DNA of 63,901 nt, counting the filler, from Octopus bimaculoides (Eukaryota), in the NCBI RefSeq assembly GCF_001194135.2. It is 7 parts of 7 records of this genome, joined end to end, with 100 filler letters (N's around TTAATTAATTAA, not from the genome) between each part and the next. Parts side by side here need not be neighbours in the genome. Positions count along the whole stretch, not along the records: positions 9,241 to 19,259 come from NC_069007.1; 6 more parts are not named here. The stretch is one strand, 5' to 3'. Below, piece after piece: positions 13,030 to 19,033 of this stretch. A program made the position numbers and the translations under genes. The notes under the pieces are model-generated. The model ran no database searches. It was not told where the DNA came from and was given only the letters and a program-made list of their open reading frames with translations. Numbering within the stretch: position 1 is the stretch's first letter; every line of letters starts with the position of its first letter.

Positions 13030-14400
13030 GAGCTGAGTATACCACAGTCTATTGACCCCCTAATACTACTGGAAATGAAAAGAATTGAACAAGGAAACAT
13101 AATGTAATGTTTTAATCCTACTTCATCAATGCCTATCAAACCCAGTGGTTAGGGCAACGGACTCGCGGTCATAGGATCGCGGTTTCGATTCCCAGACCGG
13201 GCGTTGTGAGTGTTTATTGAACGAAAACACCTAAAGCTCCACGAGGCTCCGGCAGGGGATGGTGGCGAACCCTGCTGTACTCTTTCACCACAACTTTCTC
13301 TCACTCTTACTTCCTGTTTCTGTTGTGCCTGTAATTCAAAGGGTCAGCCTTGTCACTGTGTCACGCTGAATATCCCCGAGAACTACGTTAAGGATACACG
13401 TTAATTTCATGAGCAGCCTGTTCCGTTGATCGGATCAACCAGAACCCTTGCCATCGTAAGCGACGGAGTGCCGATTAAACCCAATGTTCCAAATATTTTC
13501 TTTGACATTCTTAGAAAAAGCACAAATACCACAAAAGATTCAACACATCTACAAATAAAGTTTTATATTTAACTACACCAAATCTCGCTAATAAAATAGT
13601 AGCTGCAAACTGCCAAGAATTGAAATCTACCAGATCATCAAATGGAACTGATTCTAAAACTTATACAACCATCACAACCAATACTACAACAACCACACCT
13701 ACGAATACTGCAATTTTGTCTGCTACTAATACTGTTAATAATACTACAGCCTTTGATATTCCTCTAACCACCTTTACCATTATGTCTACTCCAGTTATTT
13801 TATCACTAGTTCTACTAGTAGAGACCACTGACGTTACTGCTTGTAGTGGTACTAGTAGCATCTGAAACAAACTAAAAGATAAGCATACAATGAAGAATAC
13901 CAATAATAACAACAACAATAATGATAATAATGAAAATAGCAACAACTCTATCAAACCACATACCACTGAAATAACCAACTGCAATTTCCAAGATTTTGTA
14001 TGTTGTCCTTTGAATAGACATTGTAACATAAAAAATGATGTCTACAAATGCAGTGTCTTAACAGACATCAACAATAAATTCTGTATTGGATGTACTCTTG
14101 ATTTTGAGAACAGATTCTACTCACACAAAAATTCCTTCGCAAATACTAAACACTCCCATACGTCACTTTCAAAATTCATATATAATTTGAAATCAAAAAG
14201 CATTGACTATAAACTGCAGTGGTCTTTGTTATGTACCACAAACGCTTATAATGGAAATAGACACCCCTATCAATTATGGCTATCACCAGCCACAATTACA
14301 AATAATTATGGCTGGTGACAGCCTCCTAAATAATAGAAAAAGAATGTATCATTAGCTGTTCATTCAAAAGACCTAAAAACCTTCAAATTTTGAGAAAAAG
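13030..14400 (+). mobile_element. Degenerate Penelope-like element: RT thumb, linker and GIY-YIG endonuclease
   Basis: ...NIM*/FNPTSSMPIKPNVPNIFFDILRK (joined across the SINE), NKVLYLTTPNLANKIV, CPLNRHC..VYKC..KFCIGCT..FENRFYSHKNSF..TSLSKFIYNLK..LQWSLL, LLNNRK. Confidence 0.85.
13141..13472 (+). mobile_element. Family C SINE (5'-clipped, internal deletion) inserted into the PLE
   Basis: Aligns to 11811-12193; flanks atcaaaccca / attaaaccca; removing it restores the PLE frame. Confidence 0.9.
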
Positions 14401-14992
14401 AAAAAAACAGATTATAACTTTATGGAAATATTGTGTATATGCTTTTGTCTTTTTGTTTGCTTTCTCTCTCTTACACGGTCTCTCTCCCTTCCTCTCTCTC
14501 TCCCTCCCTCTCTCTCTGTATATATGGTTGTGTGTGTGTCTGTGTACATGCAGGCATGTTTGTTTATATGTATATATGCGTACATATATGTACGAGTACA
14601 TGTATTTGTATATATGTATATGTGTGTATGTATGTGACTATATAAATGTATGTACATGTAAATGCATGTGTATCATCATCATTGTTGAATGTCCATCTTC
14701 CATGCATGTATGGGTAGGACAGCCTACAGGAGCCGGCCAGGTAGAAAAACCACCCAAGGCTACTGTATCCGTTTTGGCAGGGTTTTTATGGTTGGATGCC
14801 CTTCCTAACACCAACCAGTCTGCAGTGTGTGTGTGTGTGTGTGTGTGTGCGTGCATAAATATGTGTGTGAGTGTGTACAGAGGCCATTACAGTTATAATC
14901 AAAAAGGCAGAAAGAGAAAACAGCACACTTGTAGGTTAGAGACTGAATTCTAGTCTCTTATGGTGGTCCAATGCTAATCACTAGAAAGCATA

Positions 14993-15847
14993 TGAGGAGG
15001 TACCCAAAAGTACCCGGAATTTTGCAATGTTTTAGTCACTTAGTTTTACATATTTACACTTTTATCGCTTTCATCATTTGAAGCAATTTTCCACTGTTTG
15101 AAACAGTGCTGGAATTCTGTGAAGTGATGCTTTTTAATACTTCTGTCGTTTTTTCCCCCTTCACCTCTTCCACATCTGCAAATTCCATAGCACCAGTTTT
15201 CATCATCAGTGATGACCTTTGAAAAAAGGTCTGAATCAATTTCCAACTGTTCTTTCAATCCATGACATGCATTCAACCGTGACTGCCTTTGATCTTCAAT
15301 GAACAAGCAAAGCACAGATTTTGCTGCAACTCTTTCCATTCACAATTCCTCACTCAAAATTCGTTGGCAGGAACTCCATCCAGTCAATTGTTTGGTAATG
15401 ATCCTTCAAGATCAGTGCATGAATTTTCATGATACTTTCATTTGTTTGGGAGGTCGACAGACGCCCTGAAAGAGGTTGGTCTTCAACCGATAAGTGACCA
15501 TTCCAAAAGCATAAAAATCCCTCATAAACTTGTGTTTTGCACATGGCAGGATCCTTGTAAGCTGTCTGAAGCGTGACAACTGTTTTGGCTGCCGTTTTCC
15601 CCAGCAGAAAACAGAATTTCATGGAAGCACTCTGTTCCCTTGTTTCAGCCATTGCCAAAATAGACGAATAGGGAAGAAGTACTGCAAAACTAAAATGCAC
15701 CACATGGCAGTACGACTTCACTCGACAATGCTGGTTAGCATACTGATGCCCGAGGGTTGCACCAAGTGAGTTCTAGTGGCAGAAGCCTGAACTATAATGA
15801 GCTTGTCTCACAGAGAACATTTCTGATTACTTTTGGGTGCCTTCTCG
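14993..15847 (-). mobile_element. Internally deleted mariner with both TIRs and TA target duplication
   Basis: Left TA|tgaggaggtacccaaaagta vs right (reverse complement) TA|cgagaaggcacccaaaagta; MKFCFLLGKTAAKTVVTLQTAYKD..KTQVYE..SGR; KVITDDENWCYG fused directly to FADVEEVK. Confidence 0.9.
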
Positions 15848-16554
15848 TATACACTCAACTCCAGTGCAGGGCCTTCAACAACTCTTATGCCAACCTGATA
15901 TCAAACAAATCACTATAGGATCTTTACTGCCTGTCAGTGAGACAATTAAATAAAGATAGTTAAAATTTGCAGACCTCCAGATCAACCTGTCACTGCACTT
16001 TTTACAATGATCCCATGGAGATATTCTTGTGGTCTGGCCCACATGATATATGACTGAACTTTTGTGGGACACAGGACTGTGCTCTGCCTCAGAGTTGGCA
16101 GATGCAATGTCACCTTGCACAGCCTGGGTAGAAATTTGCTTTTGAGTTGGAGTTGATGTCCATGTGTAAACTAAGACAGAGAAGGAAGAGCGTGGGGGAC
16201 AATGCCAAAACCTGGGGTAAGTCAGAGTTGAGAGTGTGAGTGGGAGCACAGAAAGAGTTCTGTCAATACATGTGGCAACAGTTTAATCTGATAAGAAGCC
16301 ATCAGTTCAAGAAATGATAGATCGGTTAAGCCCATAGGCAGGAAATTCCAATAGCAGATTCACATCACAGATACAGTTAAAAACTTTATTGATGTTAAGG
16401 GAACAACATTACTTTTATCAAACTCCTTTATGACATGATCTACTTTCTTCCGTCTAGGTTGGGACAAAGTCTATGGATACCGGAGAAGAAAAGGGGAAAT
16501 TGTCCAAATGTTTACCTCTGATTTTTGATATTTTCAGGAAGATTATAGAATGAT

Positions 16555-17021
16555 AGTAAAAGTATATTTGCCAATGCACCATGGCAGTTCTACGTAGGAT
16601 GATGTTACTACTTTTTAGCCTAATGAAAACATCTTTTCCAGTTGGCTACCAACACATGGTCTATGTCTGTATACTGTGAGTAAGGGAGTCTACTGCTCCC
16701 TTTCTAGCCATAGTGATACCTGTAGACCAATGGTTTCTGGATAATTTCCCTTCATCAGTGCAGGACAACTGCCAGCGAGAGACAGCAGCCACTCACTCTT
16801 GCTCACCGTATATACTTTTAAAGTGACACACAGTCACTGATCTCATAAACAGAAAAACAACTGGTTTTAAATCTCTGAGCGAGAAATATATAGTAACAGT
16901 ACTGTAGAGTAAAGTCTATTTGTCAACGCAAAGTGGCAGCCCTACATAGGATGATGCTACTACTTGTTAGCCCTAGGAAAACATCTTTTCCAGTTGACTG
17001 CCGACACATGATCTGTGTCTG
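16555..17021 (-). mobile_element. Hammerhead-bearing family A element: 352-nt unit plus about 115-nt direct terminal redundancy (retrozyme-like)
   Basis: 16561-16669 vs 16913-17021 align without gaps at 90/109 identity (hand count), offset 352; hammerhead lies between them. Confidence 0.8.
16719..16764 (-). ncRNA. Minimal type I hammerhead ribozyme motif (family A, copy 2)
   Basis: Minus strand CCTGCA-CTGATGA-A-GGGAAATTATCC-A-GAAAC-CATTG-GTC-TACAGG. Stem I 5/6 paired, stem II 3 bp, stem III ACC/GGT quasi-palindrome, GUC triplet. Confidence 0.75.
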
Positions 17022-18731
17022 ATAGTGCTTTAAAATGTTATGGCAACCCACAACCAGAGGCTCAGATCAAATGCATGCAACTAGTTTTGCTAAAGGTACC
17101 TAAAAGCCAGTAGGTGGGATATAACTGGGTCAGGGTCACATGCCTATTGACCACCCTGCATCCAAAAAAAAAAAAAAAACACAACATGATTATATTATAT
17201 TAGTTGGTTAAATTATAGTCAGAAGGTAGATTCCTGTTTGGGTTTCATAAATTCAAACTTCAAATTTAAAGAACAATTCAGAACAGTCATGGTATTAATC
17301 TCTGGAGGCATAAGCCATGAACTAGGTTGTAAACCGTGGATAGGCAGATACCTTGAAAATATATCACAGGATGACTACCGTGCCGTGCATAGATATAGGT
17401 TGCCCTTTGGCAAGCAGTGCAGCCAAACAGTAGAGATGAAAACTAATGACAGTCACTATATTTTGTTGTTAGTCAAAAGGACTTCACTTTATTGCTTCAA
17501 GTCTGCTTCTCAGCATCATATTTTCAAAAATTATTGCTAGAAAATATTGAAGTTGACCAAGTAAAACTTTGCCAGTTGCTACTGTGCTATCACATTCAAT
17601 TTAAATTAAACGTCGCAGATAAAATAGAATGATGAATGAGAGAGAAAAAGGTTAGCAGTTGAGTAGCTTAACACAGAAAGCATAGACAACATGAATATAA
17701 TTGACAGCACAAATAGGAAGTTAGACTTAGGTTTTTTTTAATGTTTCTTAGTGTTTTTCTTTGTTTTTCCTAAAATGTGAAATTGATAAAAACGAAGGTG
17801 GAATTTGGTTGGTGGTGGAAGAGGTACTTTAAAAAAATAATTGTTAAATTTCAGTCAAAATTTTAAATTCATATTTAAATGAGAGCTCTGTTGATGATAA
17901 TGACAAATAATAGGGATGGGTAATGATGGTGGTGGTGATAATAATAATGGTGGTAGAGATGATGGGGCTGTTTATGATGATGATGATCATCATGATCATC
18001 ATCATGGCTATGCCAGTCCTAATAATGATAATCATGGGAATGCTAATGATAATGATATAAAAAGAATGAAACTTCATCCATTGAATGTATTCCAAATAAT
18101 ATTTGCTGGAACAAAAGTTATTTAATTTATATAAATATCTTTGTGGGTTGAATCAACAATTATTATACAGAACTGGAGAATATTAATGTGGGACAATTAA
18201 AATAAGTAAATCATGAAAATTGATTAGTAAGAAGCTTGGAGAGAGTTTTTAGATTAGACAGTGAAATATGAACAATCAATATAAGAGAAAGACGTAACTT
18301 GATAGTGTCAAGATTTCTGCTTTTTGCTTTAATAGTATTTATAAATTTTAAGGTTATGGTAAGTGGTTGGAGTGACAGAGGAGCAATAATAGTCCCAGCT
18401 GCAACCACAGTTACATTATGGAGTTGGAATATTCAATGAGATCTCCAAGCAGGCTATGAAAAGACATTGTTTTAATTACAAGCTATCAATGCAAAGCGGA
18501 AGAGACACTGAGTCCAGCAAAACAATCTATTTTGTTCTGTTACCATGATAAAATACCCTAACCCACTTTCTTTCACATAGGGGTAGACCTAATCTATGTC
18601 TCAGTTTTAAGCAAGTTTTGTTAGCTTTTCAGAGTCTTTAGCAGAATCTACTCCACTGCAAACATTTAGACTAGGACTCTGTAATGCTTCCTATTGTATC
18701 ATTCATTGCACAATGCCAATATTTGTCAGAG

Positions 18732-18928
18732 AATTAAAGCAGCGAGCTGGCAGAATCATTAGCACACCTGGCAAAATCTTTACATTCTGAGTTCAAATTT
18801 CATCAAGGTCAACTTTACCTTTCATTCTTTAAGGGGTCGATAAAATAAGTACCAGTTGAGTACTGGGGTTGATGTAACTGACTTACCCCCTCCCACAAAA
18901 TTGCTGGCCTTATTCCAAAATTTGAAAT
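18732..18928 (+). mobile_element. Family M SINE with a 15-bp TSD-like repeat
   Basis: caatatttgtcagag (18717-18731) / caatatttgttagag (18929-18943). Confidence 0.85.
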
Positions 18929-19033
18929 CAATATTTGTTAGAGTACAAATGAAGATTCTTCTCTAGTTTGAGCTGACCATTAGATATGACAATGGTCCAG
19001 CTCTATAAGTGATGCTTTGGGCCACTGCCTTAA

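What the first reader, a model, noticed from the sequence alone, without database searches (positions are those of the whole stretch)
16555..17021. Retrozyme-like 352-nt hammerhead element with terminal redundancy
Seen: two gapless direct repeats (90/109 identical, exactly 352 nt apart) enclose a minus-strand type I hammerhead (CTGATGA...GAAAC...GTC, stem I cctgca/tacagg). No ORF is present. Known: animal non-LTR retrozymes are non-coding tandem units of a few hundred nt with minimal type I hammerheads; they form circular RNAs and are thought to be mobilised by PLE reverse transcriptase. Inference: a 1.3-unit insert is what reverse transcription running more than once around a 352-nt circle would leave. 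This may be an undescribed cephalopod retrozyme family. Caveats: this copy has only one hammerhead, a C-A mismatch in stem I and about 17% divergence between repeats, so it is probably an old relic of an active family elsewhere.
Basis: partly seen in the sequence, partly recalled or inferred. Interest (0 to 1): 0.85.

Follow-up and report, generated by a model that had tools for sequence, protein, structure and literature searches.

The report
Decayed hammerhead retrozyme-like repeats in octopus
This stretch of an octopus-like genome holds two old, degraded copies of a small non-coding repeat (unit 352 nt) that carries a type I hammerhead self-cleaving RNA motif; it looks like a new member of the animal "retrozyme"/Penelope-associated repeats, which is interesting but not surprising.

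Summary
Two direct repeats (16555-16676 and 16908-17027, about 82% identical, offset 352 nt) enclose a minus-strand hammerhead-like motif at 16719-16764. New here: a second, diverged copy of the same element lies on the plus strand at about 10482-10745, with its own hammerhead motif at 10490-10534.

Between the two copies every catalytic-core base is kept. Only the free position N7 differs, and 22 of 24 stem positions still pair, four of them through compensatory changes. A motif this good arises by chance about once per 1000 random 10-kb pieces.

The two copies are circular permutations of one unit, so head-to-tail order belongs to the family.

The unit is non-coding and 40.6% GC, and no reverse transcriptase or GIY-YIG domain was detected in the 10-kb piece. 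Repeat-derived reading frames match Octopus bimaculoides gene models.

Best reading: relics of a non-LTR retrozyme, or non-autonomous Penelope-like, family.

Not shown: longer tandem arrays, circular RNA, self-cleavage, or the mobilising enzyme. Both motifs fall well below Rfam thresholds, and this locus, with one imperfect ribozyme, cannot release a monomer.

Verdict: new member of a known kind, moderate interest.

The parts
16545..17038 (-). Copy 1 of the element: about 1.35-1.4 units of a 352-nt unit. On the minus strand it reads arm A, then U1, then the hammerhead, then U2, then arm B. The ends are approximate.
   Evidence: nhmmer self match 17039-16541. The flanks show no significant similarity to the unit.
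16908..17027 (-). Arm A, the upstream direct repeat on the minus strand.
   Evidence: 82.8% identity and K2P 0.20 to arm B; K2P 0.53 to copy 2.
16555..16676 (-). Arm B, the downstream direct repeat on the minus strand.
16719..16764 (-). Type I hammerhead-like motif of copy 1. Stem I is 16764-16759 with 16724-16719. The CUGAUGA box is 16758-16752. Helix II is 16750-16748 with 16741-16739, flanked by A16751 and A16738. GAAA is 16737-16734. Helix III is 16734-16732 with 16728-16726. C17 is at 16725, so the predicted cleavage is between 16725 and 16724.
   Evidence: Sequence read; chance estimate; Rfam HH9 13.3 bits (below threshold); pair counts.
10482..10745 (+). Copy 2 of the same family, about 0.75 unit, in the order hammerhead, U2, repeat segment, start of U1. 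It is a circular permutation of copy 1.
   Evidence: blastn 64-68% identity; local alignment across the unit junction; nhmmer E 6e-14 and 4e-10.
10490..10534 (+). Type I hammerhead-like motif of copy 2: CGUAUG | CUGACGA | A GGG UAAAUA CUC A | GAAA | C UCGA G U | C^ | CGUGCA. The helix III region ACUCGAGU is a perfect palindrome. Predicted cleavage is between 10528 and 10529.
   Evidence: Rfam Hammerhead_1 15.1 bits (gathering score 34); pair counts; the cofold minimum-free-energy (MFE) structure forms the 8-bp intermolecular helix III.

Best explanation
Both loci are decayed genomic copies of a non-coding repeat family with a unit of about 352 nt. Each unit carries one type I hammerhead ribozyme, and the units are joined head to tail. 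In other words, it is an octopus member of the animal non-LTR retrozymes, which current work regards as non-autonomous derivatives of Penelope-like elements.

Inferred mechanism for active family members (none of it is shown here):
- Multimeric transcripts fold the ribozymes. These probably act in pairs, because helix III is short and palindromic.
- Cleavage after GUC releases 352-nt monomers.
- A host RtcB-type tRNA ligase circularises the monomers.
- A retroelement reverse transcriptase, most likely from a PLE, copies the circular or multimeric RNA and integrates pieces with variable end points.

This would give a 1.35-unit insert (copy 1) and a 0.75-unit insert (copy 2).

Shown here: the repeat, the hammerhead core and its covariation, the circular permutation of the two copies, the lack of coding capacity, and the host. 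Copy 1 has one imperfect ribozyme and no partner, so it is a dead relic.
For: 1. Hammerhead descent.
- A motif this good is expected about 0.001 times per 10 kb, yet two are present, at homologous positions in two copies that are only about 64% identical.
- All 12 fixed core positions are identical in the two copies, and the one free position (N7) differs. By my arithmetic, 0.64^12 is about 0.005 under neutral decay.
- 22 of 24 stem cells pair. Four pairs changed on both sides and three changed compatibly on one side. Slid controls give 4-50% pairing.
- The best Rfam match for each motif, out of 4227 families, is a hammerhead family.
- The architecture matches the 'canonical' metazoan type I motif described in PMC4209133: helix I of 6 bp, helix II of about 4, and a short helix III with a palindromic loop (ACUCGAGU in copy 2). 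Loop 2 is UAAAUA in copy 2, against the Hammerhead_1 consensus CAAAUA.

2. Head-to-tail unit.
- Copy 1 reads rep-U1-HHR-U2-rep. Copy 2 reads HHR-U2-rep-U1, with the same rep/U1 junction. No single 352-nt linear monomer explains both.
- The two arms of copy 1 are equally distant from copy 2 (K2P 0.53 each) and 0.20 from each other. The arm duplication therefore post-dates the split of the two lineages, as expected if the arms were identical at insertion.

3. Retrozyme-like properties.
- The unit is 352 nt, against 350-390 bp in mussel and 330-350 in axolotl.
- GC is 40.6%.
- There is no ORF longer than 48 aa and no protein relative.
- No tRNA-like part was found.
- No RT or GIY-YIG domain was found in the piece.

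4. Other repeat families also occur 2-3 times in this 10 kb, so two copies here suggest an abundant family. This is an inference.
Against: - Both motifs score far below Rfam gathering thresholds (13.3 against 52; 15.1 against 34) and went unreported in the 10-kb search; copy 1's was also missed in a 600-nt search.
- Helix II is only 3 bp and is flanked by an A on each side, where canonical ribozymes have G10.1-C11.1.
- The nearest-neighbour MFE of each 50-nt motif is not the hammerhead fold: -0.9 against -9.9 kcal/mol for copy 1.
- The monomer is only weakly more stable than shuffles, z about -1.7.
- No locus here shows two ribozymes in tandem, and no target-site duplication was found.
- No further family member could be retrieved from any collection, so copy number, arrays and expression are unknown.
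- The Pfam scan covered only open segments of at least 45 aa. It lost a weak known hit when segments were concatenated, so a badly decayed PLE ORF could have been missed.
Confidence: 0.65

Rival explanations
1. The copies are solo or truncated pseudo-LTR pieces of an autonomous Penelope-like element. The ribozyme belongs to the PLE terminal repeat, and the 1.35-unit structure is the usual PLE partial-tandem insertion of a heavily 5'-truncated element, not a separate retrozyme family.
For: - PLEs carry type I hammerheads in their pseudo-LTRs and insert as partial tandems; most PLE hammerheads occur as single, truncated elements.
- An unpaired nucleotide between A9 and helix II, as seen in both copies, is a conserved trait of PLE hammerheads.
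- Retrozyme consensus sequences are phylogenetically close to PLE pseudo-LTRs, so the two cannot be separated from one locus.
- Cephalopods harbour PLEs.
Against: - No RT or GIY-YIG signal was found anywhere in the 10-kb piece.
- The same rep/U1 junction occurs in two independently diverged copies. Independent 5' truncations would not reproduce it.
- The ribozyme has the canonical architecture (helix I 6 bp, short helix II, helix III present). It does not have the PLE 'min-HHR' form, with helix II of 7-8 bp, helix I of 4-5 bp and no helix III.
Confidence: 0.2
2. It is a hammerhead-bearing satellite or local tandem duplication that spread by DNA-level processes (unequal crossing-over, segmental duplication) without any RNA or circular intermediate.
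For: Only 1.35 units and one partial unit are seen. There is no target-site duplication, no poly(A) tail and no reverse transcriptase nearby. Newt and cricket hammerhead repeats were first described as satellites.
Against: - The two copies lie 6 kb apart in opposite orientation and are 36% diverged. They are dispersed, not part of one array.
- The core and the pairing were kept across that divergence, which argues for selection on a functional RNA in the source copies.
- The classical hammerhead satellites have themselves been reinterpreted as retrozymes (PMC7229834).
Confidence: 0.1
3. The hammerhead resemblance is a chance match inside an ordinary duplicated segment.
For: Scores are below Rfam thresholds. 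There are mismatches in stem I, a non-canonical base of helix II, and an MFE that is not the hammerhead fold.
Against: Expected frequency is about 0.001 per 10 kb, against two observed. The second instance sits at the homologous position of a diverged copy, with the full core kept and compensatory changes.
Confidence: 0.03

Closest known systems
Non-LTR retrozymes of invertebrates, e.g. the Mytilus galloprovincialis 350-390 bp repeats (Cervera and de la Pena 2020, PMC7229834)
   Same: Mollusc host. Non-coding unit of about 350 nt. Low GC. One type I hammerhead per unit. Head-to-tail organisation. Ribozyme loops that depart from the archetypal loop 1/loop 2 contacts.
   Different: Here only 1.35 and 0.75 units are seen, both decayed. 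No array, no evidence of circular RNA and no tested cleavage. No sequence-level comparison was possible.
Amphibian satellite-2 / axolotl retrozymes (HHR_Amex1 and HHR_Amex2, 330 and 350 bp)
   Same: Unit size. Short helix III capped by a palindromic loop that implies dimeric action. HHR_Amex2 has a mismatch (U-U) at the base of helix II, comparable to the A/A seen here.
   Different: Vertebrate host with tens of thousands of arrayed copies and demonstrated cleavage and circularisation. The mismatch here is A/A, and helix II is only 3 bp.
Hammerheads of Penelope-like element pseudo-LTRs (min-HHR; Cervera and de la Pena 2014, PMC4209133)
   Same: Type I topology, an extra unpaired nucleotide after A9, a palindromic 15.2-16.2 region, partial-tandem insertion structure, and frequent solo copies.
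   Different: PLE min-HHRs have a long helix II (7-8 bp), a short helix I and usually no helix III, keep G10.1-C11.1, and flank an RT/GIY-YIG ORF. None of that is seen here.
Rfam Hammerhead_1 (RF00163) and Hammerhead_HH9 (RF02275)
   Same: Best-scoring families for the two motifs. Shared core boxes, GAAAC...GUC, AAAUA in loop 2, and CCUGCA-type stem I.
   Different: Scores of 15.1 and 13.3 bits are well below the gathering scores of 34 and 52. Helix II does not align.
Plant LTR retrozymes (Cervera et al. 2016, PMC4918200)
   Same: Non-coding, hammerhead-bearing, flanked by direct repeats, and proposed to move through circular RNA.
   Different: Plant elements carry type III hammerheads inside roughly 350-bp LTRs, plus PBS, PPT and 4-bp target-site duplications. 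Here the ribozyme is type I and lies between the repeats, not in them.

Membership tests
Hammerhead ribozyme, type I | Conserved catalytic core: C3 U4 G5 A6 N7 G8 A9, G12 A13 A14, A15.1-U16.1, H17 | tested here: met
   All present in both copies; only N7 differs (U in one, C in the other).
Hammerhead ribozyme, type I | Three helices around the core, with helix I open (type I topology), supported by covariation | tested here: met
   22 of 24 cells paired, 4 compensatory pairs, slid controls 4-50%. Only two sequences, so statistical power is low (92-105 of 500 shuffles reach the observed values).
Hammerhead ribozyme, type I | G10.1-C11.1 pair directly adjoining the core | tested here: not met
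   Both copies read CUGAYGA-A-GGG...YYC-A-GAAA. An A on each side separates the first G-C pair from the core. A single extra nucleotide after A9 is known in PLE and some viroid hammerheads. The 3' A has no precedent that I could document.
Hammerhead ribozyme, type I | Score at or above the Rfam gathering threshold | tested here: not met
   HH9 13.3 against 52 bits; Hammerhead_1 15.1 against 34 bits.
Hammerhead ribozyme, type I | Self-cleavage after H17 | not testable with these tools
   Needs in vitro transcription of monomer and dimer constructs.
Animal non-LTR retrozyme | Short tandem (head-to-tail) repeats of about 150-450 bp | tested here: inconclusive
   The 352-nt unit and head-to-tail junctions are present in both copies, but only 1.35 and 0.75 units. 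No array of two or more full units is seen.
Animal non-LTR retrozyme | A type I hammerhead in every unit | tested here: inconclusive
   Each locus covers the ribozyme position only once, and it is occupied both times. No locus has two ribozymes.
Animal non-LTR retrozyme | Non-coding, low GC (<45-50%), no LTR/PBS/PPT | tested here: met
   Longest open frame 48 aa with no homologue. GC is 40.6%. No tRNA-like segment. PBS and PPT were not specifically searched.
Animal non-LTR retrozyme | Multi-copy, dispersed family | tested here: inconclusive
   Two dispersed loci in 10 kb. Genome-wide copy number could not be tested, because no cephalopod genome collection was available.
Animal non-LTR retrozyme | Expressed as unit-length linear and circular RNA | not testable with these tools
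   Needs RNA-seq, northern blots or RNase R treatment.
Penelope-like element pseudo-LTR | Continuous with, or flanking, an ORF encoding RT and GIY-YIG endonuclease | tested here: not met
   No RVT or GIY-YIG hit in any open segment of at least 45 aa of the piece. Sensitivity is limited for heavily decayed ORFs.
Penelope-like element pseudo-LTR | Min-HHR architecture (helix II 7-8 bp, helix I 4-5 bp, no or minimal helix III) | tested here: not met
   Helix I is 6 bp, helix II is 3 bp plus A/A, and helix III is 2-3 bp with a loop (compared).

The most novel reading that the evidence does not exclude
Octopus genomes hold a still-undescribed, possibly active non-LTR retrozyme family that produces circular RNAs of about 352 nt. 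Its hammerhead is an atypical natural variant in which two conserved adenines (an A/A mismatch or two bulges) separate helix II from the catalytic core. This feature is kept in two copies that have diverged by about 36%, and so is presumably compatible with activity.
Probability: 0.35. Interest if true: 0.45.

Novelty: new member of a known kind. Interest (0 to 1): 0.35.

Why it matters
If confirmed genome-wide, it would add cephalopods to the animals known to carry hammerhead retrozymes. So far the only cephalopod record in the searched literature is a count of 235 Rfam Hammerhead_1 hits in the giant squid genome (PMC6962438).

It would also give a source of abundant small circular RNAs in an animal noted for unusual RNA biology and a repeat-rich genome. 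And it would provide a natural test of how much variation at the helix II/core junction the hammerhead tolerates.

It would not change the current picture of retrozymes, which are already described as widespread in invertebrates, including molluscs.

Tried and rejected
1. Rfam on the whole piece and on 600 nt gave no hammerhead hit. Only very short search windows gave sub-threshold hits.
2. A possible third, degenerate CTGATGA...GAAAC at about 10997-11036, downstream of copy 2: one borderline local alignment (score equal to the shuffle maximum), but no Rfam hammerhead hit and no nhmmer similarity. Rejected.
3. Extending copy 1 beyond 16545 or 17038, and a shared 3' end for both copies: not significant.
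4. Target-site duplications: only a 7-mer (TGATAGT) that lies inside the homologous ends, at chance level.
5. Finding other family members:
   - exact-pattern scans of JGI metagenomes (two patterns) and IMG/VR gave 0 hits;
   - a concatenated six-frame translation of both copies against the 5.8-billion-protein set gave no hit;
   - exact-product look-ups of five window ORFs and one Octopus protein found nothing on record.
   No cephalopod genomic DNA could therefore be reached.
7. Thermodynamic support: the isolated motifs and the 352-nt monomer are not significantly more stable than shuffles.
8. A SINE-like (tRNA-derived) origin: no tRNA-like sequence.

Full report
**Observation.** The direct repeat is real. 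The repeat finder reports 16559-16669 and 16911-17021, 111 nt, 83% identical, spaced exactly 352 nt. A gapped alignment extends the arms to 16555-16676 and 16908-17027, and blastn gives 82.2% over 118 nt, E 1.7e-26.

Between the arms, the minus strand reads CCUGCA-CUGAUGA-A-GGG-AAAUUA-UCC-A-GAAA-CC-AUU-GG-U-C^-UACAGG at 16764->16719. The unit holds no open frame longer than 48 aa.

**Is the hammerhead more than chance?** Rfam does not call it. There was nothing in the 10-kb or 600-nt searches. In a 76-nt search the only hit was Hammerhead_HH9 at 13.3 bits, against a gathering score of 52.

I wrote a descriptor loose enough to accept the motif: CUGANGA; helix II of at least 3 bp, with one mismatch allowed at its base; GAAA; helix III of at least 2 bp ending in U, followed by H; and at least 5 of 6 pairs in stem I. 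Applied to 3000 Markov-1 random sequences of the piece's length, it matched 3 loci. In the real piece it matched 2.

**A second copy.** The second match is on the plus strand at 10490-10534: CGUAUG-CUGACGA-A-GGG-UAAAUA-CUC-A-GAAA-C-UCGA-G-U-C^-CGUGCA. Its best Rfam match is Hammerhead_1 at 15.1 bits, against a gathering score of 34.

Its surroundings are homologous to the first element. blastn gives 64-68% identity, and nhmmer gives E 6e-14 and 4e-10. So there is a second copy of the family at about 10482-10745.

**Comparing the two ribozymes (alignment A1).**
- All twelve fixed core positions are identical. The single free core position, N7, is the one that differs (U versus C).
- At the copies' overall identity of about 64%, keeping twelve positions by neutral drift has a probability of about 0.005 (my arithmetic).
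- Of 12 proposed pairs, 22 of 24 cells are standard pairs. Four pairs changed on both sides and three changed on one side compatibly. Sliding the partners by 1-3 columns drops pairing to 4-50%. With two sequences the shuffle control is weak (about 100 of 500 shuffles reach the observed values), so this is supportive rather than decisive.
- Both copies share an A on each side of helix II, and UAUCAC just 3' of stem I.
- Loop 2 is UAAAUA in copy 2, against the Hammerhead_1 consensus CAAAUA.
- In copy 2 the helix III region ACUCGAGU is a perfect palindrome. It forms an 8-bp intermolecular helix in the cofold minimum-free-energy (MFE) structure.
- Copy 1 has ACCAUUGGU, one indel away from a palindrome.

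These traits match the published description of canonical metazoan type I hammerheads: helix I of 6 bp, helix II of about 4 bp, and helix III of 1-2 bp with a small palindromic loop, acting as dimers in tandem repeats. An unpaired base after A9 is typical of Penelope-associated hammerheads (PMC4209133). A mismatch at the base of helix II has a precedent in axolotl HHR_Amex2 (PMC7229834).

**Anatomy of the element.**
- On the minus strand, copy 1 reads arm A (17027-16908), U1 (16907-16765), hammerhead (16764-16719), U2 (16718-16677), arm B (16676-16555).
- On the plus strand, copy 2 reads hammerhead (10490-10534), U2, repeat segment (about 10572-10697), then at least 45 nt of U1 (to about 10745). 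Its repeat/U1 junction is the same as in copy 1.
- Whatever 352-nt linear monomer one chooses, at least one of the two copies crosses a unit boundary. Head-to-tail continuity, from a tandem or circular template, is therefore a property of the family and not an accident of one locus.
- The two arms of copy 1 are equidistant from copy 2 (Kimura two-parameter distance, K2P, 0.53 each) and 0.20 from each other. The arm duplication is therefore younger than the split of the two lineages, as expected if the arms were identical at insertion.
- Neither copy's flanks resemble the unit, and no convincing target-site duplication exists.
- A possible third degenerate core at about 10997 was not supported.

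**Other properties.**
- GC is 40.6%, against 37.9% for the piece.
- The virtual 352-nt monomer folds to -97.8 kcal/mol linear and -93.6 circular, with 64% of bases paired, but z is only about -1.7.
- The isolated 50-nt motifs do not adopt the hammerhead fold as MFE. This is usual for hammerheads with a weak helix III, but it is also a caveat.
- No tRNA-like part was found.
- Tandem Repeats Finder does not list the 352-nt period, as expected for 1.3 copies.

**Surroundings and host.**
- Pfam scans of all open segments of at least 45 aa found no reverse transcriptase or GIY-YIG domain. The method is weak for decayed genes.
- The only domain signal is a weak HTH_48 hit in a mariner relic at 15353-15772, minus strand. 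That segment is 61% identical to the N-terminus of a mariner transposase.
- Translations of other repeats in the piece match segments of Octopus bimaculoides gene models at 70-100% identity, for example 84% over 70 aa. The piece therefore comes from an octopus or a close relative.
- The piece is repeat-dense. Several other families occur 2-3 times in it, so two copies of this family suggest that it is abundant. This is an inference.

**Search for relatives.** No cephalopod genome collection was available.
- Pattern scans of metagenomes and viral contigs found nothing.
- A six-frame concatenated protein query found nothing.
- Exact-product look-ups found nothing.

Genome-wide copy number, arrays and association with Penelope-like elements (PLEs) therefore remain untested.

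**Interpretation.** The best-supported reading is a pair of decayed copies of a hammerhead-bearing, non-coding, head-to-tail repeat family. That makes it an octopus member of the animal non-LTR retrozymes.

- Published work describes these as 150-450 bp low-GC tandem units, each with a type I hammerhead, widespread in invertebrates including a mussel with 350-390 bp units. They are expressed as circular RNAs after self-cleavage and RtcB ligation (PMC7229834).
- A 2026 preprint argues that they are non-autonomous derivatives of PLE pseudo-LTRs, and that monomeric derivatives are common and dispersed (10.64898/2026.07.22.740005).
- The mechanism (transcription, dimeric cleavage, circularisation, reverse transcription, insertion with variable end points) is inferred from that literature. 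None of it is shown here.
- Copy 1 has one imperfect ribozyme and no partner, so it cannot release a monomer.

**Rivals.**
- A solo or truncated PLE pseudo-LTR (confidence 0.2) cannot be excluded from one 10-kb piece. It is disfavoured by the canonical ribozyme architecture, the shared unit junction and the absence of any RT signal.
- DNA-level satellite spread (0.1).
- Pure chance (0.03).

**Novelty.** The held literature has no description of hammerhead repeats or retrozymes in Octopus. The only cephalopod record is a count of 235 Hammerhead_1 hits in the giant squid genome. This is a new member of a known kind. The conserved A/A at the helix II/core junction is a small variant worth a cleavage assay.

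Noticed in passing
window 15049-15772 (-): Relic of a mariner/Mos1-type transposase N-terminus. Weak Pfam HTH_48 hit (E 0.016), and 61% identity over 90 aa to a metagenomic mariner transposase (P0001). The frame is broken.
   Followed up: partly
window 9486-9651 and 14672-14837; open frame 9546-10058 (+): Two copies (70% identical) of a repeat whose translation (LAEFLQLDALPNANHSE...) matches internal segments of many Octopus bimaculoides gene models at 70-100%. This looks like an abundant octopus repeat that has been exonised or mis-annotated in gene models. The end of the same frame (HHDNAHLHT...) looks like a mariner C-terminal remnant.
   Followed up: partly
window 11826-12188 and 13141-13472: Direct repeat of about 360 nt, 83% identical, 1.3 kb apart; probably two copies of a SINE-like family.
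   Followed up: no
window 11311-11461, 11524-11694, 18776-18940: Three copies (70-80% identical) of another interspersed repeat of about 170 nt.
   Followed up: no
window 9241-9372: Six tandem copies of a 22-nt unit (AAACCACTGCAAACGGTATAAC, 90% matches), cut by the edge of the piece.
   Followed up: no
window 14479-14890: TC, TG and TA-rich microsatellite block. It produces spurious sub-threshold miRNA matches (mir-297, mir-466, mir-3149) in Rfam.
   Followed up: no
window 17165-17180: A 16-nt A run about 130 nt beyond copy 1 on the plus strand; possibly the tail of an unrelated plus-strand retroposon.
   Followed up: no
window 10997-11036 (+): CTGATGAAAGTAAATT...GGAAAC resembles a further degenerate hammerhead core about 500 nt downstream of copy 2's ribozyme. 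It has no helix support, no Rfam hit and no nhmmer similarity to the unit.
   Followed up: yes
window 17969-18006: Palindromic ATGATC/ATGATG microsatellite (inverted repeats I1, I4, I7).
   Followed up: no
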